From positions 5,828,001-5,892,000 of the forward strand of contig CM069154.1 of the NCBI GenBank assembly GCA_035221665.1: 64,000 bases of DNA, in the 5' to 3' direction. Shown here one piece after another: positions 5,701-49,998 of the stretch (position 1 is the stretch's first letter; each line of letters opens with the position of its first letter). Source of the DNA: Okamejei kenojei. Taxonomy: Eukaryota. The notes beneath the pieces were generated by a model. The model was not told where the DNA came from and did no database searches. It worked only from the letters and a program-made list of their open reading frames with translations. A program made the translations under genes and the position numbers.

Positions 5701-6396
5701 CATTCTCTTGCCTTCTCCGCGTGGCCTTTGACCCTTGTACTAATCAAGAACCTGTCAATCTCTGCTGGATATTCCTTGCTTTCGCCTGACATAATGGACT
5801 GAATAGGTGGAAAGGACACTTAATTTTTATTATTTCTTAGAAATAGTCATAAAAGGTGTCGGGGATTATGGGCAGAGAGTTGGAGAATGGGATTAAGAGG
5901 GAAAGATTGGGGATGTGAGGGGGGGGGGGAGGGGGGTAATCGGAGCACCCGGAGAAAACCCACGTAATCACAGGGAGAATGTGCAAACTCCACACAGAGA
6001 GCACCTGAGCTCAGGATCAATCCCAGGTTTCTGGCATGTGAGGCAACAGCTTTACCCTTGCAGAGATTGCTATTACACTCCGGATGTCAGGGGTTATGGG
6101 GAAAAGGCAGGAGAATGTGGTTAGGAGGGGGAGATTGATCAGCAACGATCGAATGGTGGAGTAGACTTGATGGGCCGAATGACCTAATTCTGCTCCTATC
6201 ACTAATGAACTTATTAACTTAATACCAGTAAGATGTTCCCTCATCTGTATTAAGGCAGGTCCTGACCTGAAACATGCCCTGTCCATCCCTTCCACAAATG
6301 CTGCCTGACCTGCTGAGTTACTCCAATGCGTTGTCAATGTTGAATTTAAAGATGCAGAAAGGGGTGAATAAAATAAATCTTACCTGTTTTCTTTGC

Positions 6397-6493: not shown

Positions 6494-9400
6494 CTAAGAG
6501 GAAAGAGGCAAAACAGTTTAATCAAAGGCGTTTATTAAGAGTGCAGGTGGATGTGCGTCCGATTATTTGTACTTAGTGTAGAAATAGAGATATCATGCGG
6601 AAACAGGCCCTTCGGCCCACTGATTCTGTGCCGACCAATGATCCCTGCATATTAACTATCCTACGCACACTAAGGACAATTTACATTTGCACCAAGCCAA
6701 TTTACCTACATACCTGTACCTCTTTGGAGTGTGGGAGGAAACCGAAGATCTCGGAGGAAACCCATGCAGTCATGGGAGAACGTACAAACTCCATACAGAC
6801 AGCACCCATAGTTAGGATTGAACCCAGGTTGTGTAAGGCAGCAACTCTACAGCTGCGCCACAGTGCCACCCGTGTTTGCTTGGGCAAGACTGTTGGGGAC
6901 ACAAAGTGCAGGAGTAACTCTGCAGTTCAGGGACCATCTCTGGAGTTTAGCGATAGGTAATATTTTGGGTCAGGACCCTTCTTCAGACTTCTGTAAATTG
7001 TCCACAGGGTATAGGATGGAACAAGAATGCAGGTGATCATATGTCGGCATGGACTTAGTGGGCCAAGGGACCTATCTTCACGTTGTATCACTAAACAAAA
7101 CTAAAGTGCAATCCAACAAGTTGATTCTCTGCCACATATTGTAGACTTTAACTTGTTCTATAATATTCCCCTGCTTTTACTTGTTCTATAATATTCTGAA
7201 ACGGTATAAAAATAATCCTTCATTCTCTACATTCTCCCCCAACTCTATAGACAAACATTGACCAGTGCAACCAGCAAGAAACAATGATAACCCCTTGTAC
7301 AGAAGTAATGTTTTATTCATCACTATAGCTATGTAGATATAGGGTAAGTGCTCAGTAGATATAACTTTATAAAGATTTAGCCTTTACCAGATATCCTTTG
7401 CCGTTGACGTATCTGTGATTGGAAAAAGTAAATGATGACTTGTTAAAATTGAGATCAATTATTGTTGGCTAGTAGTGCAGGTAAATGTCTATAACATGTT
7501 TAATCTAACTCATCAATTTGTTCACAAACAAAAAGTTAAAATTTAATGTGTAGGTAGGAACTGCAGATGTTGGTTTAATATGAAGATCAACACAAAGAGC
7601 TGGAGTAACCCAGCAGGTCAGGCAGCATCTCCGGAGAAAAGGAATAGATTACGTTTCGGGTCGACACCTTTTTCGAGACTGAGAGTCAGGGGAAAGGGAA
7701 ATGAGAGATGTAGGCGATGACATAGAGAGGTATGGAACAAATGAATGAAAGATATGTGAAACAGTAACGATGATCAAGGAAACAGGCTATTGATAGCTGT
7801 GAGCTAGGTGTAAATGAGTTATACAGACAGAAACTCTCCAGGAAGGCAGTGAAACTAGTACAATGACGAGGTTAAAATTTAAATTGGAGTCATAGAGCCA
7901 TGGAAGAGTCATACAGTGTAGAAATAGGCCCTTAGGCCCAACTTGCCCACAACATGTCCCAGCTACCCTAGTTCCAGCTGCCTGCGGTGGCCCATATCCC
8001 TCCAAACCTATTCTATCCATGTTCCTGTTGAACGGAAATTAAATTAAATGAAAGCTTAAATTAAAGGTTAAATTAAATTAAAATTAATGGTTAAATTAAA
8101 ATTAAGATGAAAATAGGTAAAAATTAATGTTCCAACAGAAAATATCTTAATTTCTTTCTAGAATAATAATTCTGTTAAAAGCTCTGGAAACTGCAAACTA
8201 TATAATAATCCACAATAATAAAACAGCAGACTATATAAGAGCATTAACATTTACAAAAGTATATTCAAGCCTTACTTTCAATGATATTAAGTTTCACACG
8301 ACTTCGCTGGTCAATTAAAACGCTCCTAATCGCACACCAATACCACCCTTCATCATTCAGTGTGAGATGTTCCATGGTGACTGAGAACTCCCTGACTTTG
8401 GTATTATCCGTAATGGATATTCTGCCATCAGACGTTGTCATGTTGTGGCCCATGGTTTGTACCAGAATAGTACAGCTCATCCAGTCACGGCCTTTGCACC
8501 AGTACTTTGGGAATTTGCTGAAATATCGAGCATATGTACAGGTGATATGGACTGATTGCCCCTCTGTTCCATTTACTGCACGTGGTCCACTTAGAGCAGC
8601 ATTTGTAACTGTTCAGTGTGAAAATATAAAACACATATTAAAACATAATATTTGTGACAGATTAATAACTGGAGAACTAAAGGACTTACAAACATATGCT
8701 CCATGTTTAGGTCCATTATTGTCAAGTGTACCACAGTACAGTGGAAAGCTTTGTTTTGCCTGCAATCCAAGCACTAAACGTTATTCCCTTTATCCTGTAT
8801 GTGTACACTGTGGATGACTTGATTGTAATCATGTAAAGTCTTTCGGCTGACTGGATAGCACGCAACAAAAAGCTTTTCACTATATCTCGGTACATGTGAC
8901 AATAATAAACTAAACTAAACTAAACTAACCATCAATGCAATCATCCTACTGAAGTACAATAGATAGAGCAAAGGGGAAGCTACAGAGTGCAGAATAGTTC
9001 TAATCATTGTGGTGCATCAGTTTCATAGACAAAGTACAATGTCTGCTATGGGATAGAGGTGATTAGGACAGTACCCAAGCTTACGGAAGTAGTGTTCTGC
9101 AGCTTGATTACAGAGGGAAAGATGTTCCTGAGTCTGGTGGAGCATTGTTTCAAGCTTATGTACGTTCTGCTGGATGGGAACAGGAAGAAGGAATGACTCG
9201 GATGAGACAAGTGTTTAATTCCGTTGGCTGCTTTTCCAATGTCCTCTATAAAGATTACTATCTAAATGGCATCAAGTTAGATTACTATCTAACTAGCGTC
9301 AAGTTGGGAAAAGGGGAAGTACAACAGGATCTGGGAGTCATTGTTCATCAGTCTATGAAAGTAAGCATGCAGGTACAACTTGCAGTGAAGAAAGCGAATG

Positions 9401-12400
9401 GCATGTTGGCCTTTATAACAAGAGGAATCAATCAGCACGGGAGCACCTCAAGGCTGCATGCTCAGCCCCCTGCTGTACTCACTATATACTCATGACTGCA
9501 TAGCCGGTCATAGTGCGAACTCCATCATCAGGTTCGCATACGACACCACTGTTGTGGGACGTATCACTGATGGGGATGAGTCAGAGTATAGAAGAGAGAT
9601 CGAGCGACTGTCCATATGGTGCCAGCACAATAACCTGGCTCTCAACACCAGCAAAACCAAGGAACTGATTGTGGACTTTGGAAGGAGTAGGATGGGGGGA
9701 CACAGTCCTGTTTATATCAACGGGTCGATGGTTGAAAGGGTCAAGAGCTTCAAATTCCTGGGCGTGCACATCTGTGAAGATCTTTCCTGGTCCGAGAACA
9801 CAGATGCAATTATTAAGAAAGCTCATCAGCGCCTCTACTTCCTGAGAAGATTACAGAGATTCGGTCTGTCAAGGAGGACTCCCTCTAACGTCTACAGGGG
9901 CACAGTAGAGAGCTTGTTGACCGGTTGCATCGTTGCTTGGTTCGGCAACTTGAGCGCCCTGGAGAGGAAAAGACTACAAAAAGTAGTAAACACTGCCCAG
10001 TCCATCATCGGCTCTGACCTTCCTTCCATCGAGGCGATCTATCACAGTCGCTGCCTCAAAAAGGCTGGCAGCATCAACAAGGACCCACACCATCCTGGCC
10101 ACAGACTCATCTCCCTGCTACCTTCGGGTAGAAGGTACAGGAGCCTGAGGACTGCAATGACAAGGTTCAGGAATAGCTACTTCCCCACAGCCATCAGGCT
10201 ATTAAACTTAGCTCGGACAAACCTCTGAACATTAATATCCCTCCATCTGTTATTTGCACATTATCAATTTATTCATTCAAATGTGTATTTACGTATATAA
10301 TGGTATATAGACACACTGATCTGTTTTGTAGTCAATGCCTGCTATGTTCTGTTGTGCTATGCAAAGAAAAAAATTCATTGTCCTGTCAGGGACACATGAC
10401 AATAAACTCTTTTGACTTTTGACTTTGACTTTGAATCGAATATAGGAGCAAAGAGGTCCTTCTGCAGTTGTACAGAGTCCCATTAAGACCACACATGGAG
10501 TATTGTGTGCAGTTGTGGTCCCCTAATTTGAGGAAGGACATTCTTGCTATTGAGGGAGTGCAGTGTAGGTTTACAAGGTTAATTCCCGGGATGGTGGGAC
10601 TGTCATATGCTGAGAGAATGGAGCAGCTGGGCTTGTACACCCTGGAGTTTAGAAGGATGAGAGGATATCTCATTGAAACATATAAGATTGTTAAGGGTTT
10701 GGACACGTTAGAGGCAGGAAACATGTTCCCGATATTGGGGGAGTCCAGAATCAGGGGCCACAGTTTAAGAATAAGAAGTAAGCCATTTAGAAGGGAGACG
10801 AGGAAACACTTTTTCTCACAGTGGGTTGTGAGTCTGTGGAATTCTCTGCCTAAGAGGGCGATGTAGGTTCTGTGGATGCTTTCAAGAGAGAGCTAGATAG
10901 GGTTCTTAAAAATAGCGGAGTCAGGGGATATGGGGAGAAGGCAGGAACGGGGTACTGATTGGGGATGATCAGCCATGATCACATTGAATGGTGGTGCTGG
11001 CTCGAAGGGCCGAATAGCCTACTCATGCACCTATTGTATATAGTCTATTGTCTATTGTCTATTGTCTATTGTCTCTCTCATCAAATTCTAATTCACCCTA
11101 CATAGAGTCATAAAGTGATATAGCATGAAAATAAGCCCTTCGGCCCAACTTGCCCACACCAGCCAACATGTCCCAGTTACACTAATCCCAACTGCCCATG
11201 TTTGGCCCATATCCCTCCAAACATGTCCTATCTATGTACGTGTTTAACTGTTTCTGGAATGTTGGGATAGTTCCAGCCTCAACTATCTCCTCTGGCAACT
11301 TGTTCCATACGCCTACCACCCTACATGTGAAAAAGTTACCCCTCAAATTTCTATTAAACCTTTTCCCCTTCACCTTAATCTTATGTCCTCTGGTCCACAA
11401 TTCACCTAATCTCAGCAAGAGACATCTGCTTCATTTGAATGTTTAAATGTGAAACTGGCAGATCATAATTTCTTGCTGCATAAAATATTATGTCCTTACT
11501 TCATTCCGAGATATATGTACATTGTTTTAAGTACTTTTTTTTCACTTCCTGAACTCCTCACATAATTGAAACGGTTTCACAAACGGGACAGCGAGATTCC
11601 AAGGAATGCCAAAGTTTAACCAAGCTGGAAGCTCTTAAAAAATATTCTGCTTTTCCTTGCTTCATGTCAAGTTAGATAATTTCACAATTCTTCATATCAT
11701 ATTGCACTTGTTTTTTCCCCAATCACCTAACCATCCTTATACTGACACGATATGGCTCAGAACAGGACATGAAGTGCTGGAGTAACTCAGCGGGTTAGGC
11801 AGCATCTGTGGAGAAGGAGAAACAACATTTTTGGGTTGGCTTCCAGCCCAGTTAGTGAAGCCGAAATCGATTAAAAAGTATAGATAACAGATAAGTGTGC
11901 TCGGAATTAAAATGCTTAAAATGGCTTTAATTATTTGGAAAGAAAATTCAAGTCAATCTATCAAGAACAGATGCTGCACAAAGCAGAAGGAAACAAGGAT
12001 GACTTGAAACATTTCCAAACAATTTGCATACAATCATGAGGTTTTTAATGCAATCACTGTCGTAATGTAGGAGGTAAGAGGACTGATTTGTGTGCATCAA
12101 CCTCCCACAAGTACAAAGAGGGGTCGGACACTCAGATTCGATCATCCAGTTCCCATTGTTGGGTATGTTTGATCTTCTGCGAACAATATACATTGCAGAA
12201 TATAGAGGTTGGATAATGGAGACTGAATGATTTCCCATCCATACAAGCGAACTCAGTTTAGTTTAGTTTGGAGATACAGCGCGGAAACTGGCTTGTCGGC
12301 CCACCAAGTCCAAGCCGACCTGCGATTCGAGCACATGAGCACTAACATACATACACTAGGGCCAATTTACAATTATACCGAGCCAATTAACATATATGTG

Positions 12401-24362: not shown

Positions 24363-24744
24363 AAGATGGTTAAGCGTCTTACGACAGAGGAAAGACACTG
24401 AAAACTGGGGTAACAGTGGGTCAGACAGCATCTCTGGAGAAAAGGAATAGGTGATGTTTTAGGTCGAGACCCTTCATCCGACAGTCAGGGTAAAGGGGAC
24501 CCAGACTCACTAGAACAGAGGAATATGGGTGATTGGCCGTTTATTGAGCGGGAGGAAGGTAAATAGTGAGATTGGTGTTGGCTTTTTAAAAATCGATATG
24601 TGACCTAGACTTGGACTTGCAAGCCACAAGTTTGAAATGAGCTGATGATGCAAAACGAAATAGCATTGTGAACTGCAATCCAGGATGTTATTGAGTTTTG
24701 GGAGTACATAGACTTGCTGGTGGAATGGACAGACATATGGCAGA

Positions 24745-25152
24745 AGGTAGACATAAAAAGCTGGAGTAACTCAGCGGGTCAGACAGCATCTCTGGAGAAA
24801 AGGAATAGATTATGTTTTGAGTTGAGACCCTTCTTCAAACTGAAAGTCAGGGGAAAGGGAAACGAGAGATATGGACGGTGATATAGAGAGATATAGAACA
24901 AACGAATGAAAGAAATGCAAGAAAGTAAAGATGATGATGGAGACTGGCTATTGTGAGCTGTGGTCTAGTTAAACAAACCAGTGTTAGCTGTGGTCTACAT
25001 GGGAAAAAAATGTTAGCTGTAGTCGAGATGAGAAAAAACATTGTTAGCTGTGGTCTATGTGAAAAAAACCATTGTCAGCTGTGGTTTTGGTGAAAACCAT
25101 GTTAGTGTGGGCTGGATGAAAACATTTGTTAGCTGTGGTCTAGGTGAAACCA
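24745..25152 (-). mobile_element. Penelope-like 3' end carrying a ~30-bp minisatellite (24951-25152)
   Basis: Penelope terminal motif followed by about 7 copies of tgttagctgtggtctaggtgaaaa..ca. Confidence 0.6.
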
Positions 25153-26465
25153 ACATCTGCAGTTCCTTCCTCAACATGGCAGATTCATTTATTGTAGAGA
25201 AATTCGGTGATACATTTTGAATACTTATGGGCAATATAGAATATTGTTACTTCAGCATTTTGTGTCTATCTTCGGTTTAAACCAGCATCTGCAGTTCCTT
25301 CCCACACAGATACTATTTGAAGAACGGTTGTGAGCATCGGGTGGCACCGCGCGCTGGCAGCCTCGCTAGCAGCTGTCCTTCCTTTCGAGTTTTTTTGTTT
25401 TTAGTATGTCTAAAAGTGGGTTTTAGTGTCCTTAAGTGTGGTGGGGGGGAGGGGGTAGGGGTAGTGGGGGCAGGGAATAGGGGAAAACTTTTTAGTCACT
25501 TATATCGATGGAATGTGACTTTTCTCCTAGTCGTATTTTCGCCCTCCCTCGTGGGCTAACAGCTTGGATTGGAGCGGCATCTCCCGGAGTTGGGTCCAGA
25601 GTTCACGGAAGGCCCCCTAAGTCCTCGTGAATACCGCGTGTTCCCAAGCCAATTAATCAATTTACCAAGCCAATTAACCTACAAACCTCTACGTCTTTGG
25701 AGTGTTGTAGAAAATCGAAGATCTTGGAGAAAATCCACGTGGTCACGGGTAGAGTGTACAAATTTCGTACCGACAGCACCCATAGTCAGGATCGAACCCG
25801 GGTCTCTGATCCCTCGGGGCATACGCTGTGCCACCGTGTCGCCCCGAGGGATCAGAGGGGCATTTACTGAGGATGTGTTGTCACAAGGGACAGATAATTC
25901 TGAGCACCGTTGATGTAATTTAGGAGATTTTTATCCCCTGGGTAAAAGATGTCCCACACATTAGCTTCAGTGCTGTCCTGACCTCTCATCTACCTCATTG
26001 GAAATCTTTGAGATGTCTTTAATTGGACTTCAGTGATATAGAGCCATAAAGAATGATGTTATGTTATCCCGTTTTCTCATCCACTCCCCTGAAAAGCTCG
26101 GGGCAATATGCAGAAGCCAATTAACCTACAAGCCCACATGTCTTTGGGATGTGGGTGGAAACCAGAACACCTGGAGGAAACTCACGTGATTGCAGGGAGA
26201 ATGTACAAACTGCACGCAGACAGCACCCGAGGTCAGGATTGAACCTGGGTCTCTGGCGCTGTGAGGCAGCAGCTCTACAAGCTATCCCACCCCTAGTGCC
26301 ACCATTGTTGATGTTGATGGGGCTTGATGAAGAGGGATGGATAGAGATTGATATTTAGTATTAACATTGGAGTGGACTAGTGGGGCTGAATGGCCTGTGT
26401 TATGCTACATAATATTAGTTTATATATTCTCAAACATTCAGACAATTCACACTTCACATCCTTAC

Positions 26466-26512: not shown

Positions 26513-27277
26513 CTAGAAAATACATCATTATTGAAAAATCCACATCAGGAACATATTTAAACTCAAGTTCATAAGTTCAGAAGTGATAGGAGCAGAATTA
26601 GTCTACTTGGCCCATCTAGTCTACTCCACCATTCAATCATGGCTGACCTATCTTTCCCTCTCAACCCTTTTCTCCTCCCTTCTTCCCATAACCCCTGGCA
26701 CCTGTACTAATCAAGAATCTATCAATTTCCGCCTGAATATATTAATTAGCCTCCACAGCCTTCTGTGGCAATGAATTTCATAGATTCACCTCCTGTGACT
26801 ACAGAAATTCCTCCTCATCTCCTTTCTAAATGTATGTCCTTTTATTCTGAGGCTGTGGCCTCTGGTCCTAAATCTCCTCGTGGAAACATCCTCTTCACAT
26901 CCATTCTGTCCAGGCCATGTGTGGTACACAGAACCGTATATATTTATTAGAATCTATGCTAAACTAGAAACTAGCTTTAGTGTCTGTTTTAGTTTTACTT
27001 TGACTTTTACGTTTAGAGATACAGCGCGGAAACAGGCCCTTTGGCCCATCGAGTCAGCGCCGACCAACAACCACCCCTACACTAGGTCTATCTTACACAC
27101 TAGAGCCAATTTACTAGAAGCCAACTAACCAAGTATGTTAGTTTAGTTTATTGTCACATGTACCATAGTTAACCATATAACAAAAGAGTTAACCATATAA
27201 CCAATTAACAAAGGTAGACAAAAATGCTGGAGAAACTCAGCGGGTGATGCAGCATCTAAGGAGCGAAGGAAATAGGC

Positions 27278-27305
27278 AACGTTTCGGGCCAAAACCCTTC
27301 TTCAG
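27278..27305 (-). ncRNA. Minimal hammerhead ribozyme motif (Penelope-derived)
   Basis: CUGAAGA-A-GGGU(UUUG)GCCC-GAAA-CG-UU; catalytic core intact, with a U.G wobble in stem II. Confidence 0.55.
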
Positions 27306-27830
27306 ACTGAAGAAGTATTTGGAATATGGGAGAAAACCCATGTGATCAGAGGGATAACGTACAAACTCAGTGCAGACAGCACCCATTGCCAGGATCAAAC
27401 CTGGGTCTCTGTAGCTATAAGGCAGCAACTCTACCGCTATGCCACTGTGCCCACCACTTCGAATTTGTATTTTTCCTTGATTTTAAACATCTCCATCAGA
27501 TCACTTTGCAACCTTCTCTGTTCTCAGGAGATCAATTGTTCGCTGTTCGCTGATCAATTATCTACCGGACTAAAGTCCTTCATTCCTAAGTTACTTTTTC
27601 TAAATCCCTTCTGTACCTCTCTAACAATTTCACAACCTTCCTTAAGTGGTGACTACAATTGTGACCAAACTCATATTTTATAAATGGAGGTACAGAAGAC
27701 TGCAGATGCTGGAATCTGAAGCAAGAAGGTATCCTGGTGCAGTCTGGACCCAAGATGTTGACAAGGTATTTCTGCTTGAAGACTCTGTTTAACCCATTGA
27801 GTGCCTTGAGCAGTTTTTTGGCTCTTATAT

Positions 27831-28161
27831 ACATAGAAACATAGAAACATCGAAATTAGGTGCAGGAGCAGGCCATTCGGCCCTTCGAGCCTGCACCACC
27901 ATTCAATATGATCATGGCTGATCATCCAACTCAGTATCCTGTACCTGCCTTCTCTCCATACCCCCTGATCCCTTCAGCCACAAGGGCCACATCCAACTCC
28001 CTCTTAAATATGGCCAACGAACTGGCCTCAACTACCTTCCGTGGCAGAGAATTCCACAGATTCACCACTCTCTGTGTGAAAAATGATTTTCTCATCTCGG
28101 TCCTAAAAGACTTCCCCCTTATCCTTAAACTGTGACCCCTTGCCCTGGACTTCCCCAACAT
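27831..28161 (-). mobile_element. CR1 3' fragment
   Basis: GKSRARGHSLRIRGKSFRTEMRK...GYGEKAGTGY* plus a (tatgtttc)n tail. Confidence 0.9.
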
Positions 28162-28355
28162 TGTTTCATGTTTCATGTCCCCATGTTTCATAAAAACTCA
28201 TATTCTATGTATCAGAGATAATTCATTTTTTTCAACCAATTTCCCAATCTGCTCTGGAACTTTCAAGGAACTTGGCTATTAAACATTCTGCAGAAGCCTT
28301 GTTTTTGTACCTTCCATTTTGTATTGTCACTTGCAATACTGACCATTAAATAAGT

Positions 28356-28383
28356 CTGAAGAAGGGTCTCGACCCGAAACGTC
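28356..28383 (+). ncRNA. Minimal hammerhead ribozyme motif (best copy), at the start of a Penelope-like end (28352-28484)
   Basis: CUGAAGA-A-GGGU(CUCG)ACCC-GAAA-CG-UC: complete core, palindromic ACGU stem III and GUC triplet. Confidence 0.6.
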
Positions 28384-29740
28384 GCCTATTCCTTCGCTCC
28401 ATAGATGCTGCCGCACCCGCTGAGTTTCTCCAGCATTTTTGTCTATCTTCGATTTTGCCAGCATCTGCAGTTCTTTCTTAAACATAATGTAATGCGTTAC
28501 ATTTTTTATTCTTACATTTTATTGGCCAAACAAAAAACTTATGAAGCAATTTAGAAAAAATAGGAAGGAACAATTGTTTGTTAATGTTATATAGTGTGGA
28601 TAAGACTTGATTATCTTGATAAGATTAAGATCAAATTTAGTATTTCACTGCCTTTAAACCTAGCTCTTCGAAACAATCAGGAAGTGGTTTGTATTCTTTG
28701 CAAAACTGTGTTCTTCTTGGAAGTCAATTGTTGAGCAATAAGTAATTAATGGTCTATCTGTGGTGAGGCAAACATAACTACTTGCTCTTTTTGTAAACAA
28801 GCTTTTGCAGTTAATTTTCTCTATTTGTTCTCCAGGCATGCTGTCGAACCCACTGAGTTACTCCAGCACTTTGTGTAAACCTGTATCATCGGTTTCTTGT
28901 CTGAAGAACGGGCCCCGACCCGAAACATCACCTATCTATGTTATAGATTCTATAGATGCACCGTATCCCACCATTGAGCCATCTATACCTCACAATGCCT
29001 CAAGAAAGCAGACAACATAATTAAGGACCTTCTTCACCCCAGCCGTCCCCTCTTCTCTCCTCTCCCATCAAGGCAGAAGATATAATAGCTTGAAATTATT
29101 CTCCACCTGTTTCACGAACAGCTTCTTCAAACCTATTGGAAATGAACACGAGGGTGTGAAGTAAGAGACTTTTAGATAAGTACAGGGATATGCAGGGCTG
29201 GAGGGATATGGATTATGTGCAGGCAGATAAGGGTTTGTTCAGGGCAAGCACTATCAGAGGGGGGGGCAACGAGTGCCATTTGTCATGGGCCTCATGCCTG
29301 TAGCTTCAAAGGGATCTTGATTTTGGGGCCTCTAAAATTGAGGGGCTTCTGCTTGAAATTCTGAAATTGAAATTGGCCTCGTCTATGAGATGGCCTGGTT
29401 CTTGGCATTATGTTCGGCACGGACGTTGTGGGCCCGAGGGCTTGTTCCTGTCATGTTTAGTTTAGAGATACAGCATGGAAACATGCCCTTTGCCCCACTA
29501 CGTTCGCTCTGACCAGCAATCACCCATACACTAGTTGTATCGTGAACGCTGGGTACAATTTACAGAAGCCAATTAACCTACAAACCTGCACGTCTTTGGA
29601 ATGTGGGAGGAGACCAGAGCACACAGAGATAACCCACGCGGTCACAGGGAGAACGTACAATCTCATAGTCAGGATTGGTCCCAGGTGTCTGGCAGCAACT
29701 CCACCGCTGTGTCACTGTGCCACAGTGTCACTGTGCATCA

Positions 29741-35235: not shown

Positions 35236-36310
35236 CACTGACCACGCTCTCGTTTCACTCCTGCCATTGGGAAGAAGATACAGGAGCCTGAAAACTGTGA
35301 CCTCCAGGTTCAAGAACAGCTTCTCAGCAGCAACAATTAGGCTTTTGAACACTGCACACTTACCTCAATTATCAAGTATGGACTGTCTTTAGTTGCACTA
35401 AAGACATCAGTTATTTTTTGTCCTTATTGGATTTATTAACTATTTCATTTTTGTACATTATACGTTAACTGTGTGCATTGTCTTTACAAGCACAATGAGG
35501 GGAATAGATAGGGTATGTGTTGGAAGGAACTGTAGATGCTCGTTCAAGCCGAAGATAGACACAAAAACCTAGAGTTACTCATCCGGTCAGGCAGCATCTC
35601 TGGAGTAAAGGAATAGGTGATGTTATGAGTCGAGACCTTTCTTCAGACAGATTTAGGGGAAAGGGAAACAAGGGTAACAAGGGAAACAAGTCTCTTATCT
35701 AGAGTAGGGGAATCAAGACTCAGGGGACAAGGCTTCAGGTGAAAGCGAAAAGATTTAATAGGATCCTGAGGGGCATCATTTTTTTACACAGTGAGTTGTG
35801 GGTGTTTGGAATGAGCTAACTGATGAGATAGTTGAGGCAGGTGATACAAATATATATTTAAAGGCATTTGGACAGTTACATGAGTAGGACTGGTTTAGGA
35901 GGAGATGGACCAAACGCTGGCAGGAGGAACTAGAGGAGATGGGGCATCTTGGTCGACATGGACAAGTTGGGCTGAAGGGTCTGTTTCCGTGCTGTATAAC
36001 TCCATAAATCTCCAGATTCGTTGTGCTACTGAAACAAAGCGTTATATTGCCACCGTCGGTACATATGACAATCATGCACTTTTGAAGCTTGCATTTAACA
36101 AAACAAAATCGACCAAATGTCCTCGACATGGATTCAGTTCCAGTGCGTAAAATAAATGTTATTAGAAGAATATACCTTGCACTATATTTGTTTTGAGTAC
36201 TGTTGATATCAATCTTGTAATTGGAGATAGTGTGGTTGTCATTGGTTCTGTTATAAAAATATATGTTATCGTTAATGTTAATTGTTAATTCCTAATGTCA
36301 CTATATGTCA

Positions 36311-37513: not shown

Positions 37514-38992
37514 GTACACACGTACACCCTATGTATCATTTATATTTTTGTGTGTCCACGTGGATGCGCCTGTGATGTTGCCACAAGCATGATTTTCATT
37601 GTACCTGCACCTCACCATACGTGCATATAAGAATAAGCCAGACTTGACTTGAAAACTGCTCAGCAAAGTATATTACAATGATGTTCTCATGAGAAAAAGT
37701 ATTTCCAGAACAATTGATCTGATGGGATGTCATAGCTTATAGTTTCCCTCTTCTAAATATTCTTCACAGTTAAAACCATGAGGCATTTCCAGGACTGAAT
37801 ACAATTTATTTCTCATGACTGCAATGTCATGCTACACAGCACAAAATAATAAGTCATTGCTATAAAGGCTAGCAACATTGTTTTGATGGCTCCTTTACTG
37901 AATGAATAGTGAGTAAACTAAGTTAATTGTTTTAGCAGAAGAAACATTAATTCTGTGCAGTCTATTATCAAAGCAAAATAAAAAACACTTTGTCAACGCC
38001 CTTTATGGGCGACTATTTGCATACCTTCGGTTAGTAAGCTAAGAATTTCACTGTGACTTGTCACATGTGACAATAAAGTATTCATTCATTCATTCATTCA
38101 TTCAAAATAATAATGATCATTTGGTCTCGTTGTAGAGTTGTTTCTCAGTCACTATCACCAGTGAATCTTCATTCTGCCTTCTACGGCAAGCTGTGAGGTT
38201 TCGGTTCATTGGGTCCCTGAAAAAAAAAATATCGAAGTCATCAGATTCATTAACTCGGGGAATTGTGCTTTATTTCACAAGGCCACTCACAACAGAATTC
38301 TGCTTCCAATTGGCACAGTGATGCAGCTGATAGAGCTGCTGCCTCACAGCGTCCAAGAATTTGCTTAGATTTTGACATTGGTGCTATCTGTGTGGAGTTT
38401 GCATGTTCTCGCTGTGGCCATGTGACGTTCCACCGCGAGCTTCGCTTTCCTCCCACCTCTCAAAGACTTGGGGTTTACAGGTTAATTGGCCAGCATGAAT
38501 TTCTCCGAGTGTGTTGGGATTTGGGATGAGAGAATGAGATAACATAGAACTAATGCATACGGGTGATCAATGGCCTGATAGACACAAAGTGCTGGAGTAA
38601 CCCAGCGAATCAGGCAAGATCTTTGGGGAAAAAGGATGGATGATATTTCAGTCAGGACCCTTCTTCAAACTGAAAGTAGAGGGGAGTGAACTGGGGTTCA
38701 GATAAGATGGCCTGCATGGTCGCAGTAGGCCAAAGGACCTGTTTCCATGCTGTATTTCTCTCTGCTTCAATGACTGTACAACATCTACGTCAAGCACTTC
38801 AGTTCATTCTGCACACAAACATCTTGTCAAGACCTATTGATATCTTCTTCGTAGAGCATAGGTGTGGCCTGTATTTGTGAAATACTTTATCTAAACACTT
38901 TCCGTTTGTTTTATTTTATCAGCATGTTTGAAAGTATTAATGGACATCATTTGGAAGCATTCAGCAATTCTGATGGTCTCCGCAAAACATAC

Positions 38993-39083: not shown

Positions 39084-39540
39084 CAGCAAAGGGGGAAAGA
39101 TACAGAATCAGTGGGAGGAAAAAGACTGGTTCGTGTTGGAAACATTAATATCCTGATTGCTGTGAAATCTCTGCATGGAGCAGGGTACAGCAACAGAGCC
39201 CAGGGAGTTCAGCTGGGAAATTCCACCGTCCAGGATCTCGACCCAAAACCTCACCTATCCATGTTCTTCAGAGATGCTGCCTGATTCGCTGAGTTACTCC
39301 AGCATTTTGCGTCTAGCGTTGATAAAGTTAGATAAGAAAAGATGGGAGATGTGACGAGTGGTATGTAAACACCAGCATGGACCAGTTTAGTTGATCTTTT
39401 CTGTGCCTTAAATCCTATGTGACCAGATGTAATTCTGCATAATCCTGGAACCTCATCACATTTAGGGTATTGAGTGCATTTCTGGTCACCATGTTACTGG
39501 AAAGATTTTGTCAAGCTGGAAAGGGTGCAGGGAAGATTTA

Positions 39541-39726: not shown

Positions 39727-40529
39727 ATTTATGAGGATGTTGCTGGGACTCGAGGGCCTGAGCTATAGGGTAAGTTTGAGCAAGCTAGATCATTATTCCT
39801 TGGAGAGCAAAAGGACGAGGTGATCTAATGGAGGTGTTCAAAATCAAGGGATGAATCAACAATTACTTTCTCATCTTTTTTTGGTTGCCTTGGCACATTT
39901 GATAGAGCTGCTCTCTTGAGGCGCCAGAGACCTGGGTTCGATCCTGACCTCAGGGTGTTATCTGCATTGTACATTTGTGGATTTGTACATTCTCCCTATG
40001 ACCGCGTGGGTCTCCTGCAGGTGCTCTGGTTTGCTCTCACATCCTAAAGGCATGAGGGTTTGGAGGTTAATTGGCATCTGTAAAATTGCCTTTAATGTGT
40101 AGGGAGTGAACAATAAAGTGGTACAACATAGAACTAGTGTTAACAGGGGGATCGAAGATAGACACAAAAAGCTGGAGTAGCTCAGCGGGTCACACAGCAC
40201 CTCTGGAGAGAAGGAATAGATGACGATTTTCGTGTTGAGTCACTTCTTCAGACTGATCTATGGCTGTCATGGACTCGTAGGGTGGAAGGGCCTGTTTCCA
40301 TGCTGTTTCTCTAAAACTAAAAACCAAAAAATATAGCTAGAGTCCATTTGGCCGATTGAGTGTATGCTGGATCTTAGATCGTTCCTTTCAATTCTACTGC
40401 ATACTCCGCTCAACATTTGAATCAATTGAAGTCAATACTCTGAGGCACTTAACACTAGCAAATGAAAGAGGAAATTCCAATTAATTCGCATAAGGAAGTA
40501 GAGCCAATCACAACAGCAGTAATAACATT

Positions 40530-40628: not shown

Positions 40629-42329
40629 CTGTTGAGTCAAGGAAATACAATTCAGCATCACCTTCTTTTAACTTGCAAACTTAAGTTCATAAGTCATCAG
40701 AGCAGAATTAGGCCATTTGGCACATCGACTTCGTCAGTTCATGTTCATAAGTGATAGGAGCAGAATTAGGCCATTCGGCCCATCAAGTCTACTCCATCAT
40801 TCAATCATGGCTGATCTATCTCTCCCTCCTAACCCTATTCTCCTGCTTTCTCCCTATAACCCCTGATACCCGTACTATCTCTGCCTTAAAATATCCATTG
40901 ACTTGGCCTCCACAACCTTCTGTGGCAATAAATTCCACAGATTCATTACCCTCTTGTATTAAGAAATTCCTCCTCATTTTCTTCCGAAAGCAATGCTCTT
41001 TAATTCTGAGGCTATGACCTCTGGCTCTAGATTATCCCACTAGTGGAAACATCTTCTCCACATATATGTTAACCCACTCATTCCTGAGATAATTCTCGTA
41101 AACCTCCGCTGGACCCTCTCAAGAACCAGTACATCCTTCCTCAGATATGATGCCCACCATATGGTCTGCTCCATTCAATCACAGCTGATCTATCCCTCCA
41201 TCTCTACCCCATTCTCTTACCTTCTACTGCCTTCAAGTAAGTCACTGTGATTGTCAGAAGGAAGCCCTTGCCTTCAGTTAAAGGCTGATTGATTTTGTAG
41301 ATGTGCTGTTTCTTTGGTGTAATTGGCCTTATTTTACAGCAAATAAGAGGCATGGTCCAACAGCGTGGAAACAGGCCATTCAGCCCAACTTGCCCTCACT
41401 GACCAACATGTCCCAACTAAAGAGTGTTTTATTGTCATTTTCCCCAGAAAGAACAATGACATTCTTAGTTGCAGCAGAACAACATCATATGTAAACATAG
41501 TACTTTGTAAATAATATATAGCAATATCATAAATGGAAGAAAAGAAAAGTTCAGTACAATCCCCCCCCCCCCCGCCTGTGTTTAGCCCATATCCCTCTAA
41601 ACCTATCCTATCAATGTACCTGTCTAAATGTTCCTTGCAATGGTACCTGCCACAACTACCTCCTCTGGCAGCTTGTTCCATATACCCACCACCCTTTGTG
41701 TAAAAAAATCCTGCTGCTGCCAACACTTAACTGTTGATCACATTTATTGATAATTTCTCATTCCGTCCCATATTTGAGCTCTGGAGATGTTGAGATGCTG
41801 CTGGGACACTTAAAGTGCTTGAGTTGGTGGGACTGCAAAGCCAGTTTAACCCTGACAAACGCAAGAGGAAGTTCTGACCAGACAGCTGGCCTTGCCAGCA
41901 CTGGGAGATCTAGTCCAGTTGCTCAGATACCTATTGGATGGATGGGGCAATGTTATTACATGGTGGATCTCATGAATGCAGTAGTTAGAACGGATCTCGC
42001 TATGACGGAACATGCTGGAGAATAGTTATGATTTGGAGCTGAGGAGCAACAGGGAAGGAGATAATATCAGCAGAAAGATGCAAAATGGTTGAGTTATGCT
42101 GGGTCAGGGGGCATCCCTGGAAAAAATGGACAGGTGACATTTTGGGTCAGAACCCGAGGGTTTCAACCCAAAATGTCGCCTATCCATATTCTCCAGGGAT
42201 ACTGCCTGACCTGCTGAGTTATTCCACCATTTTGTCTTTCTTTGGTAGAAACCAGCATCGAAAGTTCCTTAGTGGAGCGTCACAATGGCTAGGAAGGCAG
42301 ATGAAGGCTGCAGCAGAAAAGTTTAAGAT

Positions 42330-42770
42330 TGAAATGCAGATGCTAAAAAAAATCGAAGGGAGACAAAAATGCTGGAGAAATTCTGCGGGTGAGACAGCAT
42401 CTATGGAGCGATGGAATAGGTGAAGTTTTGGGTCAAGACCCTTCTTCAGACTGATGTGGGGGCTGGGGGGGGGGGGAAGAAGAAAGGAAGAGGCAGAGAC
42501 AGTGAGATGTGGGAGAGCTGGGAAGGGGAGGTGAAGGAGGGAAAAAGCAAGGACTACCTGAAATTGGAGATGACAATGTTCATACCTCTGGGGTGTAAAC
42601 TACCCAAGCGAAATATGAGGTGCTGCTCCTCCAATTTGCGGTGGGACTCACTCTGGCCATGGAGGAGGCCCAGGACAGAAAGGTCGGATTCGGAATGAGA
42701 GGGGGAGTTTAAGTGCTGAGCACCTGGAGATCAGGTTGGTTAATGCGAACTGTGCGGAGGTGCTGGCAAG
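42330..42770 (-). mobile_element. Penelope-like element 3' portion including the GIY-YIG endonuclease C-terminus
   Basis: Minus strand reads AQHLNSPSHSESDLSVLGLLHGQSESHRKLEEQHLIFRLGSLHPRGMNIVISNFR*, then a pyrimidine-rich UTR, the hammerhead motif (42419-42452) and the common short terminal repeat. Confidence 0.8.
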
Positions 42771-43190
42771 ATTTGTTCGTTATCTAAAAATTGAGAATTC
42801 AACGTTCATGCCATTGGATTGTAAGCTGCCTGCGCTGAATGGCAATGGAGGAGGCCCGGGACAGGAAGGTCATTTTAATTCATTTGATACACTTGTTTCT
42901 CACTGATCTGTTCCTGTCGGATTATTAGTTTGAATCGGAATGCAAACCTCCGACAGGGTGAAGTTTCATACAGTTCAGAGGCAGGGAAATGTGCTGAGCA
43001 TCCCAATTGAAGTGGGTGGCCGATCAGTGGGACAGAGCCCGCACTGGGTGGAGCAAAATGAGTGGGGTTCCCCGCAGGTCTCTGCACCGCTGCGGAGCCT
43101 CTGGATATCGGTGCTGCCCTGACCCTTCCCAGAGAAAACATGGATCAGGCATTTCAGTGGAGACGTCAAGTCAATTGCTGAGAAACATAC

Positions 43191-43504: not shown

Positions 43505-44644
43505 CTGAAACAGAGAGGAAAAATCTTCAGAAAATGTACAGGACAAATCTACTTAACACAGCGTTTGCTGGCCCACCCACTCTTCCCCTAACCAACGATG
43601 GGCCGAATGGTCCAATCCGTATGTGGACACTCACTTACCCTTGAGCCAAACACAAAGTGTTGGTGCAACTCAGCAGATCTGCAGCACCTGTGGAGGGAAT
43701 GGACGCGCAAAGTGTCGGGTTGGGACCCTTCTTCAGACTGATTAAAGTAGGGTGGGGAAAGCTGGAAGAGAGGTGGAGATGGGATAAAGCCTGGCAAGTG
43801 ATAGGTGGAAGGTAGACACAAATTGCTGGAGTTAACTCAGCGGAACAGACAGCATAACACGTGGATACAGATGAGGGGGGAATTTTGACTGGTTCATGGG
43901 TGGACAAAGACTGGAGGTGAAAAGCGGTCAAAAGGTTGTAAGATAAGAGAGAAGAGAAGCGAAATGTAAAGCCAGAGGGAGGGGTATATTTGGCAGTGGA
44001 CAGGGGGGAAAGGGAGGAAGAGGCATGGGTGAAATGGCTGTACACCTGCGTGGGGCCAAATGGCCGAACCCGTGTCTGGACATTCACTTACCCTTGAGCC
44101 AAACACAAAGTCCCGGTGTAACTCAGTGACTTTGCAGGCCTTCCGTGAACGCTGGTCGCCACAGGAGGTCGAATAAATACCGATGATGACAACGTTATTT
44201 TTAAATTGATGGCTGTTGTTCTGTAAAATGCTGCAAAGGTAGTTATGATTGTGTTACTTCTTTTTGTATGTTTATTTTGTTTCTGAGTAAAATTATTTGT
44301 ATTTAAAAAAAGTGTAACAGGCAGCATCTGTGGGGGAATGGGGGACGTTTTGTGTCAGACCTTTATCCAGGGTAGGGGGGGGGGGGGGGTGGGTAATGGG
44401 AGGGGGGAGGTGGTAATGAGAGGGGGGAGGGGAAGCCACCTTGATCATTCACCAATTTGTGCTCCCTCTCCATGCATGGCCCTTTTCAGCCCTTGTTCCT
44501 CAATGATTTTAGTCTGAAGTGCAGTCATTGCCATTGTTGGACCAGCCATGTCTGTACTACCCCCAGCCAGGTCAGTACATTCTAGGGTTACTTTCCACTC
44601 CAGAGATCTAGGATCATCCTCCACTGCCTTGAAGAACTGACTTT

Positions 44645-47289: not shown

Positions 47290-47825
47290 GGATAGACACA
47301 AAATGCTGGAGTAACTTAGCGGGTCAAGCAGCATCCCTGGAGAAATTTGAATAGGAGACATTTTGGGTCAAGACCCTTCATCAGATTGTGAGTCAGGAAG
47401 GGGGAAACTAGAGGTATGGGAAAGTACAGAACAACGCAGAGACTGCATCTATAACTCAAGAAAGGTGGAGTCCACAATGGTCCATTGTTGGCTGGGGATG
47501 AGGTGATAACGAAGGAATAAAAAACGATGAAATTAGCAAGAAGACTAGGGGGAGGGACGGAGAGAGAGGGAATGCAACGGTTCCTTGCAGTTAGAGAAAT
47601 CAATTATCATGCCGCTGGTAGACACTAATGCTGGAGTAACTCAGCGGGATAGGCAGCATCTCTGGAGAGAAGGAATGGGTAGATTTTCAGGTCGAGACCC
47701 TTCTTCAGACTGATGCCAGGGGAGTGGGCAGGACAGAGATAGAATGTAGTCGGAGATGTAAGACTGGTGGGATAACTGGGAAGGGGGAGGAGATGGAGAC
47801 AGATGGAAAGCAAGGGCTATTTGAA
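47290..47825 (-). mobile_element. Two tandem Penelope-like 3' ends
   Basis: Two gctggagtaact..gcagcatc..gacccttc(a/t)tcaga units, each with a purine-rich UTR. Confidence 0.65.
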
Positions 47826-49334: not shown

Positions 49335-49998
49335 GTTTAGTTTAGTTTAGTATATCGTCACATGTACCGAGGTACAGTGAGACGCTTTTTGTTGCATGCT
49401 CTCCAGTCAACAGAAAGACTATGCATGATTACTGTTTAAGAAAAAACTCCAGATGCTGGAAAAATCGAAGGTAGACAAAAATGCCGGAGAAACTCAACGG
49501 GTGAGGCAGCATCTATGGAGTGAAGGAATAGGCGACGTTTCGGGTCGAGACCCTGGTTCGTGACCCGAAACGTCACCTATTCCTTCGCTCCAGAAATGCC
49601 GCCTCACCTGCTGAGTTTCTCTAGCGTTTTTGCCTACCTATGCATGATTACAAACAGCCATCCACAGTGTACAGATGCAGGATAAAGTGAATAACATCTA
49701 ATGCAAGATAAAGTCCAGTAGAGACCGGGTAAAGATAGTCTGACTGTCTCCAATGAGGTAGATGGGAGGCTAGGATCTCTATCTAGTCGGTGAGAGGATG
49801 GTTCAGTTTCCTGGTAATAGCTGAGAAGAAACTGACCCTGAATCTGGAGATAAGTATTTTCACATTTCTGTACCTCTTGGCTGATGGGAAAGGGGAGAAG
49901 AGGGAGTGTCCAGGGTGCGACTCATCCCTGATTATGCTGGTGGCCTTGCCAAGGCAGCGTGAAGTGTAGATGGAGTGAATGGAAGGGAGGTTGGTATA
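49335..49998 (-). mobile_element. Rex1-like LINE 3' end
   Basis: NLPSIHSIYTSRCLGKATSIIRDESHPGHSLFSPFPS, UTR and (taaac)n. Confidence 0.78.
49433..49637. mobile_element. Fold-back Penelope-derived mini-insertion with 14-bp TSD
   Basis: Inverted arms ~49469-49548 and 49562-49639; ctatgcatgattac repeated at 49419-49432/49638-49651. Confidence 0.8.

What the first reader, a model, noticed from the sequence alone, without database searches (positions are those of the whole stretch)
27278..28383. Hammerhead-ribozyme motif dispersed in more than 20 Penelope-derived ends across the window
Seen: the very common ~130-bp repeat begins with CTGAAGA-A-GGGT(N4)ACCC-GAAA-CG-TC. Intact copies lie at 28356-28383(+) and 27278-27305(-). 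Variant or decayed copies occur near 350, 381, 6960, 7650, 24455, 24815, 28901, 35620, 38640, 39235, 40225, 42145, 42420, 43710, 47355, 47680, 49535, 49562, 50741, 51470, 52100 and 53510. Stem II (GGGT/ACCC or GCCC) is kept while its tetraloop varies (CTCG, TTTG, CTTG, CCTG, CCCA). At 42330-42770 the motif lies on the sense strand just downstream of a GIY-YIG C-terminus, which ties it to Penelope-like elements. Known: CUGANGA/GAAA/NUH is the hammerhead core, an extra A after A9 is tolerated, and Penelope elements carry minimal type I hammerheads with palindromic stem III that cleave as dimers. Inference: these introns are seeded with potential self-cleaving sites, many on the receptor (minus) strand, and many copies were disabled by CpG decay of G12. 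Many insertions stop within a few nt 5' of the core, suggesting the ribozyme defines a SINE-like mobile unit. Caveat: stem I is only about 2 bp.
Basis: partly seen in the sequence, partly recalled or inferred. Interest (0 to 1): 0.8.

Follow-up and report, generated by a model that had tools for sequence, protein, structure and literature searches.

The report
Penelope retroelement tails carrying minimal hammerhead motif
The common ~100-130-bp repeat is the truncated 3' end of a Penelope-like retrotransposon that starts with the minimal, dimer-type hammerhead-ribozyme motif already known from such elements; almost every copy here is a mutated fossil, so this is a new example of a known thing.

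Summary
The window has about 28 copies or fragments of one repeat, roughly one per 2.3 kb. The repeat begins with CUGAAGA-A-GGGU(N4)ACCC-GAAACGUC. Only two copies pass a minimal-hammerhead descriptor: 28356-28383(+) and 27278-27305(-).

The repeat is Penelope-derived. One copy (42321-42790, minus strand) follows the last ~60 codons of an ORF, and that peptide matches the C-termini of RT+GIY-YIG proteins. The family also shows Penelope hallmarks: heavy 5' truncation, head-to-head inverted pairs, head-to-tail pairs and an optional ~30-bp 3' tail.

The motif has the published traits of Penelope minimal hammerheads: an extra nucleotide after A9, a G10.1-C11.1 pair, palindromic ACGU in place of stem III, and a very short stem I.

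No evidence here shows activity. Rfam finds no hammerhead, stem covariation does not exceed shuffled controls, and the hammerhead fold is not the predicted minimum-energy fold. No raw RNA reads of this organism were available.

Copy 5' ends do cluster beside the core, at -6..+1 and at +7/+8, but not at the predicted cut site. Ribozyme cleavage therefore does not define the unit.

First-stage notes report the same family in at least eight other stretches of this genome.

Verdict: new member of a known kind, modest interest.

The parts
28356..28383 (+). Intact minimal hammerhead core: C3-A9 box CUGAAGA, extra A, stem II GGGU/ACCC with loop CUCG, G12-A14 GAA, A15.1-C15.2-G16.2-U16.1 palindrome ACGU, C17. 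The predicted cut lies between 28383 and 28384.
28356..28483 (+). Complete short unit of subfamily A: core, RT-initiation region up to +98 (28453), and the optional ~30-nt tail 28454-28483. The upstream flank is unrelated from -3.
27211..27305 (-). Second descriptor-positive copy, core at 27278-27305, with a GUU site and a U.G pair in stem II. It ends at about +95 without the tail. Nine nt upstream (27307-27315) are the reverse complement of its own first 9 nt.
42557..42790 (-). Remnant of the C-terminal GIY-YIG endonuclease region of a Penelope-like ORF. It has one frameshift near 42735, and the stop codon is at 42554-42556.
42450..42553 (-). 104-nt C/T-rich spacer between the stop codon and the hammerhead core, ending ...CAUCAG|U. 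It looks like a splice acceptor, which was not tested.
42321..42449 (-). Hammerhead plus tail of the long copy. The core is dead: G12 is A, G16.2 is U, and the loop CpG is lost.
42783..42874 (-). Second, older remnant of a Penelope ORF end (...GMNVEFSIFR*). It abuts the 5' end of the 42321-42790 copy.
249..373 (-). Decayed copy, head-to-head with 381-478. It starts at about -2.
381..478 (+). Decayed copy, head-to-head with 249-373.
6250..6347 (+).
6898..6996 (-). Decayed short copy with unrelated upstream flank.
7546..7807 (-). Long copy of subfamily B. It has 130 nt of spacer upstream of a dead core and carries the full tail.
11772..11835 (-). Fragment running from about stem II to +95, strongly decayed.
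24414..24510 (-). Decayed copy with about 25 nt of spacer. It lies 358 nt from the next copy on the same strand.
24743..24968 (-). Long copy of subfamily B. It starts at -130, the same 5' end as 7546-7807.
25245..25305 (+). Tail-only fragment, from about +68.
28820..28900 (+). Copy that starts at about +30, next to the predicted cut site. Its tail end abuts the next copy head-to-tail.
28901..28999 (+). Decayed copy starting at the core. It has two extra nt after A9, and the stem III palindrome is lost (ACAU).
35515..35680 (-). Decayed copy with spacer and tail.
38577..38690 (-). Decayed copy with spacer.
39232..39323 (+). Copy starting at the base of stem II (+7/+8), with unrelated upstream flank.
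40151..40257 (-). Decayed short copy starting at about -6. It ends at +100 without the tail.
42050..42155 (-). Left arm of a head-to-head pair. It starts at the base of stem II.
42157..42270 (+). Right arm of the same pair. It also starts at the base of stem II.
43644..43806 (-). Decayed copy with about 70 nt of spacer. It sits directly behind the tail piece of another copy (43807-43860).
44300..44440 (-). Decayed copy, core from 44370, with a C-rich spacer.
47291..47420 (-). Decayed copy with spacer. It lies 324 nt from the next copy on the same strand.
47617..47825 (-). Copy with about 113 nt of spacer, alignable to the 42449 copy back to the stop-codon region.
49434..49553 (-). Young subfamily-A copy, 93% identical to 28356, starting at the base of stem II. 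Left arm of a head-to-head pair.
49555..49640 (+). Right arm of that pair. It starts at the base of stem II.
50741..50813 (+). Decayed short copy that starts at the first base of the core.
51419..51497 (-). Decayed short copy with C3 changed to A.
52100..52185 (+). Subfamily-A short copy with an internal deletion after the core. G12 is A.
53423..53540 (-). Decayed short copy with C3 changed to U and C11.1 changed to U.

Best explanation
The repeat is the 3' terminal module of an endonuclease-encoding Penelope-like retroelement (PLE). The module runs, in order: the end of the RT/GIY-YIG ORF, a ~104-nt C/T-rich spacer, a 28-nt minimal type-I hammerhead motif, and ~70 nt leading to the site where reverse transcription starts, with an optional ~30-nt tail.

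PLE insertions are copied from that internal start site back towards the 5' end of the RNA and are mostly cut short. The genome therefore fills with short hammerhead-plus-tail pieces, some joined head-to-head or head-to-tail.

Shown here: the anatomy, the PLE protein link, the two 3' end classes, the inverted and tandem junctions, and the CpG decay.

Inferred from published work on other PLEs: in active source elements, two copies of the motif would pair through the palindrome ACGU to build stem III and would cleave after GUC, weakly and probably with help from the element's own protein.

The genomic copies in this window are fossils. Only two keep an intact core, and nothing suggests they act on the host transcripts.
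For: Family and chance:
- About 28 copies in 64 kb.
- Pattern search gives 9 hits against 0 expected.
- The descriptor gives 2 hits against 0.01 expected.

PLE link:
- The 58-aa ORF end at 42557-42730(-) gives 137 hits at E<=1e-3, placed at protein C-termini.
- The long hits carry RVT_1 plus GIY-YIG, for example P0076 with 827 aa, and also P0070 and P0051.
- P0001 is 80% identical over the aligned ORF end; its own sequence carries the YIGET...RLGDRFAEDLRSV...HFNSPSHS motifs, and the frameshifted remnant just upstream in the window resembles them.

PLE hallmarks, as described in PMC8557442, PMC8969392 and PMC11167929:
- Strong 5' truncation.
- Head-to-head pairs at 373|381, 42155|42157 and 49553|49555.
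- Head-to-tail junctions at 28900|28901 and 43806|43807.
- Two 3' end classes, +98 and +128, that differ by a ~30-nt tail.

Family majority: in contigs of the same organism the commonest letters at G12, G16.2 and the loop CpG are those of the intact motif, with shares of 61-67%.

Decay: the transition rate is 0.29 at CpG positions against 0.10 elsewhere.
Against: - No Rfam hammerhead model matches, either at gathering score or at E<=10.
- Stem I is only 2 bp (U.G or U-A, then G-C).
- The hammerhead-compatible fold is less stable than the predicted minimum: -4.8 against -10.1 kcal/mol for the monomer and -12.7 against -23.0 for a dimer. A competing helix pairs GAAGGG (+6..+11) with UCCUUC (+35..+40).
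- Covariation in stems I to III is not above shuffled controls.
- The core is not clearly better conserved than +41..+100 over all copies: 0.81 against 0.79.
- No full-length element lies in the window, so the position of the motif relative to the ORF start and the transcription start is unknown.
- No RNA evidence could be obtained. The runs of this organism are held as contigs only.
Confidence: 0.85

Rival explanations
1. The short hammerhead-plus-tail piece (about 100-130 nt) is a mobile unit of its own. It would be a non-autonomous, SINE-like or retrozyme-like parasite of the Penelope machinery. Its RNA would begin 3-6 nt before the core, contain all that the reverse transcriptase needs, and be copied in trans.
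For: - 11 of about 28 copies have unrelated flank starting at -6..+1.
- In contigs of the same organism, 630 pieces break at -3 with loose letters that agree with each other only 0.31, meaning random flank.
- For the Anolis element PAc, the minimal RNA template is the region from near the hammerhead cut site to the RT start sites (PMC11167929).
- One head-to-tail junction joins a tail end directly to a core start (28900|28901).
Against: - Short and long copies interleave in the tree: 8 label changes against 7.5 in shuffles. The tree rests on only 93 columns and is star-like.
- Nine or ten copies continue into the spacer, and one continues into the ORF.
- A second 5' end class lies at +7/+8.
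- No tandem arrays of the unit exist in the window.
- No internal promoter was shown.
- Plain 5' truncation with a preferred stop gives the same picture.
Confidence: 0.3
2. The motif is kept in the element not as a ribozyme but as part of the RNA structure that the Penelope protein binds before starting reverse transcription. Its likeness to a hammerhead would be inherited and would no longer support cleavage.
For: - Stem I is only 2 bp, Rfam is negative, and the hammerhead fold is not the minimum-energy fold.
- In PAc, hammerhead mutants do not affect insertion in vitro, and no RNA-seq reads end at the cut site (PMC11167929).
- PLE hammerheads cleave poorly in vitro even as dimers (PMC4209133).
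- Naiad PLEs thrive without hammerheads (PMC8557442).
- Only one copy in the window starts near the cut site.
Against: - The full set of catalytic-core letters, the extra nucleotide and the palindrome are kept as the family majority, and they are the same in subfamilies A and B, with 1 difference in 28 nt.
- PAc does cleave when its protein is present, and the compensatory C3G/G8C change partly restores cleavage (PMC11167929).
Confidence: 0.3
3. The hammerhead-like string is a chance resemblance in an ordinary repeat.
For: No Rfam match. No covariation.
Against: - All 11 core letters are present.
- Three further traits specific to PLE minimal hammerheads coincide.
- The motif sits downstream of a PLE ORF (PMC4209133).
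- The descriptor is expected 0.01 times per window.
Confidence: 0.02

Closest known systems
Minimal hammerhead ribozymes (min-HHR) in the pseudo-LTRs of Penelope-like elements (Cervera and de la Pena 2014, PMC4209133; dimer cleavage by Lunse et al. 2016, as cited in PMC6765202)
   Same: - Type-I order of the boxes.
- CUGANGA and GAAA cores.
- An unpaired nucleotide between A9 and G10.1.
- The G10.1-C11.1 pair.
- No real stem III, only a palindrome (ACGU) that can pair between two copies.
- A short helix I (2 bp, as in D. virilis Penelope).
- Location near the 3' end of a PLE.
- Most genomic copies are single motifs from truncated elements, some in opposite orientation close together.
   Different: - Stem II is only 4 bp, whereas PLE min-HHRs often have 6-8 bp.
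- The host appears to be a cartilaginous fish (my own reading of the repeat content, not tested), a group not covered in that paper.
- Local density is very high, about one per 2.3 kb.
- Activity was not tested.
Poseidon element PAc of Anolis carolinensis (Frangieh et al. 2024, PMC11167929)
   Same: - A hammerhead lies roughly 70-100 nt upstream of two alternative internal RT start sites, which give insertions with or without a 30-40-nt tail.
- Both target strands can be extended, which fits the head-to-head pairs.
- The region from the hammerhead to the RT start is the minimal template.
   Different: - In PAc the ORF starts at stem II of the hammerhead.
- Here the reading frame after the core is not kept between subfamilies A and B, because of a 1-nt indel and a stop in B. 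The module therefore looks non-coding.
- No full-length copy was available to check this.
Animal non-LTR retrozymes (Cervera and de la Pena 2020, PMC7229834; Li et al. 2026 preprint 10.64898/2026.07.22.740005)
   Same: - Short non-coding units with a type-I hammerhead, related to PLE pLTRs.
- Monomers dispersed in the genome.
- Reported from one chondrichthyan genome.
   Different: - Retrozymes are defined by tandem arrays of 150-450-bp units with canonical hammerheads (6-bp helix I, loop-loop contacts) and by circular RNAs.
- Here there are no arrays, the hammerhead is the minimal kind, and circular RNA was not testable.
Sm-alpha / Sj-alpha SINE-like elements of schistosomes (described in PMC6765202)
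   Same: A short dispersed retroposon carrying a hammerhead motif.
   Different: - Those have a Pol III promoter in front of an active canonical hammerhead.
- No promoter was shown here.
- Here the unit is plainly the end of a PLE.

Membership tests
Hammerhead ribozyme (type I, PLE minimal variant) | Catalytic core letters C3 U4 G5 A6 N7 G8 A9, G12 A13 A14, the A15.1-U16.1 pair, and H17 | tested here: met
   All are present at 28356-28383(+) and at 27278-27305(-), where H17 is U. They are lost in the other ~26 copies.
Hammerhead ribozyme (type I, PLE minimal variant) | Stem II closed by G10.1-C11.1 | tested here: met
   The stem is GGGU/ACCC, 4 bp, and is paired in 90% of cells across copies. 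Covariation is not above shuffled controls.
Hammerhead ribozyme (type I, PLE minimal variant) | Unpaired nucleotide between A9 and G10.1, and palindromic 15.2-16.2 replacing stem III (PMC4209133) | tested here: met
   An extra A follows CUGAAGA, and GAA-ACGU-C follows stem II. The CpG of the palindrome survives in 8 of 25 copies.
Hammerhead ribozyme (type I, PLE minimal variant) | Stem I between the flanks of the core (4-6 bp in most; 2 bp in D. virilis Penelope) | tested here: inconclusive
   Only 2 bp form (U2.1 with G or A at 1.1, and G2.2 with C1.2), paired in 70% of cells. This lies within the published range only at its lowest end.
Hammerhead ribozyme (type I, PLE minimal variant) | Match to the Rfam hammerhead covariance models | tested here: not met
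   There is no hammerhead hit at gathering score or at E<=10. I did not check whether these models recognise known stem-III-less PLE hammerheads, so this negative may have little weight.
Hammerhead ribozyme (type I, PLE minimal variant) | Mg2+-dependent self-cleavage 3' of H17 | not testable with these tools
   No raw RNA reads of this organism were available. Only one genomic copy starts near the cut site.
Penelope-like element (EN+ PLE) | One ORF with a reverse transcriptase followed by a C-terminal GIY-YIG endonuclease | tested here: met
   Only the last ~60-80 codons survive in the window. They match the C-termini of proteins that carry RVT_1 plus GIY-YIG. There is no RT remnant of this family in the window.
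Penelope-like element (EN+ PLE) | 5' truncation, partial tandems (pLTR), inverted 5'-truncated partners, and an optional 30-40-bp 3' tail | tested here: met
   All four are seen.
Non-LTR retrozyme | Tandem arrays of 150-450-bp units, each with a canonical type-I hammerhead, expressed as circular RNA | tested here: not met
   No tandem array of the unit exists in the window. The hammerhead is of the minimal kind. Circular RNA was not testable.

The most novel reading that the evidence does not exclude
The 100-130-nt hammerhead-plus-tail module is itself a trans-mobilised mini-element with a fixed RNA 5' end 3-6 nt before the core. That end would be set by a transcription start or by a stop of the reverse transcriptase at the folded or bound ribozyme, not by ribozyme cleavage. 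If the local density of one copy per ~2.3 kb holds genome-wide, the family would have reached the order of a million copies. That would make it by far the largest family of hammerhead-bearing sequences known in any genome.
Probability: 0.25. Interest if true: 0.5.

Novelty: new member of a known kind. Interest (0 to 1): 0.3.

Why it matters
The result adds a very abundant vertebrate family to the known set of Penelope-like elements that carry minimal hammerheads. The host is probably a cartilaginous fish.

It also gives a clean natural picture of PLE insertion anatomy that matches the in-vitro findings for the Anolis element: two alternative 3' ends about 30 nt apart, head-to-head pairs, and head-to-tail pairs.

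The one point a specialist might pursue is that 5' ends pile up on either side of the CUGAAGA box rather than at the ribozyme's cut site. This argues that cleavage does not make the 5' end of the transposed RNA in this family. It hints instead at a preferred stop or start at the ribozyme.

For annotating this genome the message is practical. These motifs are repeat fossils and should not be called functional ribozymes in host introns.

Tried and rejected
1. Rfam at gathering score and at E<=10 gave no hammerhead.

2. Other hammerhead permutations, read by eye from the sequence: a type-III arrangement with a stem I hairpin upstream of the core, and a long stem III reaching the downstream GUC at about +88. 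Both fail because the required pairs or the H17 letter are missing.

3. An ORF starting in the tail, as in PAc. An ATG at +52 opens a 26-codon frame in subfamily A, but subfamily B has a 1-nt indel and a stop, so this was rejected. A frame read through from a hypothetical splice of the stop codon to the core is also open in A but closed in B, so it was rejected too.

4. Covariation in stems I to III is not above shuffled controls.

5. A separate lineage of short copies was not seen in the tree.

6. Pfam and the protein atlas on the 58-aa ORF end gave nothing usable: the best named neighbour was GIY-YIG at a score of 0.88, which is only a lead. The exhaustive HMMER search settled the question instead.

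7. Reads:
- The only raw-read run offered (X21) belongs to a distant species, with 13 reads all under 90% alike.
- The runs of the window's organism are contigs, so RNA ends and cleavage could not be examined.
- No joint in the contig tables fits splicing of the spacer.

I therefore could not fetch a full-length element or more copies from a relative.

9. Lunse et al. 2016 is not held in the library. Its content is cited only through PMC6765202.

10. Target-site duplications around short copies showed nothing convincing by eye.

The alignment tool printed its own short majority line, which I did not use further.
Full report
**What is in the sequence**

At 28356-28383(+) the window reads CTGAAGAAGGGTCTCGACCCGAAACGTC. 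At 27278-27305(-) it reads the same apart from a U.G pair in stem II and GTT instead of GTC.

The 28-nt pattern with up to three mismatches occurs 9 times against none in 100 shuffles. I also wrote a looser descriptor: CUGANGA, 0-2 spare nucleotides, a stem of at least 4 bp closed by G-C, then GAAA. It picks out exactly these two sites, against 0.01 per randomised window.

Six more turned up on closer reading: 6249+, 11835-, a tail-only piece at 25245+, 28820+, 42155- and 44370-. That makes about 28 copies in 64 kb.

**What the repeat is**

The copy at 42321-42449(-) is preceded by a 104-nt C/T-rich spacer. Before that lies the end of an ORF with its stop at 42554-42556.

I scored the last 58 residues against 1.84 billion proteins. 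This gave 137 matches at E<=1e-3, nearly all at protein C-termini. The long ones carry a reverse transcriptase followed by a GIY-YIG endonuclease: P0076, P0070 and P0051. The closest, P0001, is 80% identical over that ORF end, and its own sequence shows the YIGET...RLGDRFAEDLRSV...HFNSPSHS stretch; the frameshifted remnant just upstream in the window resembles it. RT plus a C-terminal GIY-YIG domain is the architecture of endonuclease-positive Penelope-like elements (PMC8557442).

The copies also show the structural habits described for PLEs (PMC8557442, PMC8969392):
- Strong 5' truncation.
- Head-to-head pairs at 373|381, 42155|42157 and 49553|49555.
- Head-to-tail junctions at 28900|28901 and 43806|43807.
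- Two classes of 3' end, near +98 and near +128, that differ by an optional ~30-nt tail.

The last point matches the Anolis Poseidon element. There, reverse transcription starts at two internal sites and the tail is the stretch between them. That enzyme also extends both target strands, which would give inverted pairs (PMC11167929).

**Is the motif a hammerhead?**

Cervera and de la Pena (PMC4209133) list four traits that recur in the minimal hammerheads of metazoan PLEs:
- consensus families;
- the G10.1-C11.1 pair;
- a palindrome at 15.2-16.2 in place of stem III.

They also note a helix I of only 2 bp in D. virilis Penelope. The intact copy has all of these.

Against this stand several negatives:
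- No Rfam hammerhead model matches, even at E<=10. I did not check whether those models recognise known stem-III-less PLE hammerheads, so I give this little weight.
- The pairs of stems I to III do not covary more than shuffled columns (score 0.214 against 0.183; 44 of 500 shuffles reach it).
- The hammerhead-compatible fold is not the predicted minimum. It scores -4.8 against -10.1 kcal/mol for the monomer and -12.7 against -23.0 for a dimer. This is because GAAGGG in the core can pair with UCCUUC at +35..+40.
- The whole unit does not fold better than shuffles (z = -0.69).

Published PLE hammerheads cleave poorly in vitro even as dimers (PMC4209133). The Anolis one cleaves only with its protein present, is not needed for insertion in vitro, and leaves no visible ends in RNA-seq (PMC11167929). 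Activity of this family is therefore open. I could not test it. The runs of this organism are held as contigs only, and the single raw-read run is from a distant species.

**State of the copies**

G12 is A in 10 of 25 aligned copies, and C11.1 is T in 7. Relative to the intact copy, transitions are three times as frequent at CpG positions as elsewhere, 0.29 against 0.10.

Only two cores are intact. They lie on opposite strands, 1 kb apart, so they cannot pair in one transcript. The nearest same-strand neighbour of 28356, at 28901, has lost the palindrome. The idea that these introns are seeded with working cleavage sites is therefore not supported.

In contigs of the same organism, the commonest letters at the three positions mutated in the 42449 copy are those of the intact motif, with shares of 61-67%. 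In that run 95,771 contig pieces lie on the 901 bases laid. The family is thus very large, and its majority form is the intact hammerhead.

**Where copies begin**

I compared the 40 nt upstream of each copy with those of all the others. Three groups emerged:
- Nine or ten copies continue into the C/T-rich spacer. Two of them begin at the same point, -130.
- Eleven have unrelated flank from -6..+1.
- Five or six begin at +7/+8, the base of stem II. These include both arms of two head-to-head pairs that belong to different subfamilies, and so arose separately.

In the contigs, 630 pieces break at -3 with loose letters that agree only 0.31, meaning random flank. The 827 pieces that break at -5 mostly run on into the spacer of the other subfamily.

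But neither class lies at the predicted cut (+28|+29), and only the copy at 28820 starts near it. Cleavage does not make these ends.

Short and long copies interleave in a tree built on +9..+100 (8 label changes against 7.5 in shuffles). This is a weak test on 93 columns. It gives no sign of a separate SINE lineage.

Three explanations remain open and are not mutually exclusive:
- the RNA often begins a few nt before the core;
- the reverse transcriptase tends to stop at the bound or folded ribozyme;
- two cDNAs primed from both target strands are end-joined there.

**A detail worth noting**

The spacer ends with a CTGAC, a pyrimidine run and CAG just before the U that precedes the core. CAG is kept in 6 of 9 long copies. 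This looks like a 3' splice site. In D. virilis Penelope the intron ends exactly at the 5' end of helix I, so that spliced and unspliced RNAs have different hammerheads (PMC4209133). I could not test this.

**Comparison and verdict**

The closest known things are the minimal hammerheads of PLE pseudo-LTRs and the anatomy of the Anolis Poseidon element. The family meets the sequence-level criteria of the former and the architectural criteria of PLEs. It does not meet the definition of non-LTR retrozymes, because it forms no tandem arrays and has no canonical hammerhead (PMC7229834).

A 2026 preprint already argues that retrozymes derive from PLE pLTRs and reports them in a chondrichthyan (10.64898/2026.07.22.740005).

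First-stage notes of this scan describe the same family in at least eight other stretches of this genome, at similar density. I did not check those stretches.

This is a new member of a known kind. Its unusual features are its abundance and the placement of 5' ends around the catalytic box.

**Limits**

- Lunse et al. 2016 is not held in the library.
- Summed contig depth over the ORF end equals that over the hammerhead, although the window has 2 ORF ends against 28 hammerhead or tail copies. I cannot explain this, and the tool warns that such depth is not a copy number.

Noticed in passing
window 43171-43404 (-): An open frame encodes an Ig V-like domain (...GIFTVTVEDLHSGDTGWYSCGITTPDHDPMLHVHLQISD). 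The Penelope fragments at 42321-42874 and 43644-43806 flank this exon.
   Followed up: no
window 28361-28366 with 28390-28395, and the same positions in most copies: GAAGGG inside the hammerhead core can pair with UCCUUC 7-12 nt after the predicted cut. This helix is in the predicted minimum-energy fold and competes with stem II. Both strands are kept in subfamilies A and B.
   Followed up: partly
window 42450-42475 (-), 7678-7700 (-), 24839-24860 (-): The spacer just upstream of the core looks like a 3' splice site (CTGAC, pyrimidine run, CAG). This recalls the intron that ends at helix I of the D. virilis Penelope hammerhead.
   Followed up: no
window 42589-42681: In contigs of the same organism, summed depth over the last ~30 codons of the Penelope ORF is as high as over the hammerhead and tail. 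The window itself has only 2 such ORF ends against 28 hammerhead or tail copies.
   Followed up: partly
window 29924-30530: Tandem array of a 36-bp unit (16.9 copies, 90% matches; also scored as a 108-bp period), GC-rich (CATCGAGCCCCGGAC...).
   Followed up: no
window 43635-44540 (-): A direct duplication about 453 bp apart. A Penelope tail piece runs into the shared sequence ...TTTGTGTTTGGCTCAAGGGTAAGTGA..., which may be a different repeat that captured or adjoins the tail.
   Followed up: no
window 27800-28160 (+): Between the two intact copies lies a different dispersed repeat (...catagaaacatagaaacatcgaaattaggtgcaggagcaggccattcggccc...). A related GGCCATTCGGCCC piece recurs at 43600-43620 and 44050-44060.
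   Followed up: no
window 56505-56712 and 61837-62061: Two more tandem arrays: an 81-bp unit x2.6 (90% matches) and a 62-bp unit x3.6 (77% matches).
   Followed up: no
window 25808-25855 (+): Weak Rfam match to mir-1540 (31.5 bits, gathering score 90, E = 0.012). It is far below threshold and probably chance.
   Followed up: no
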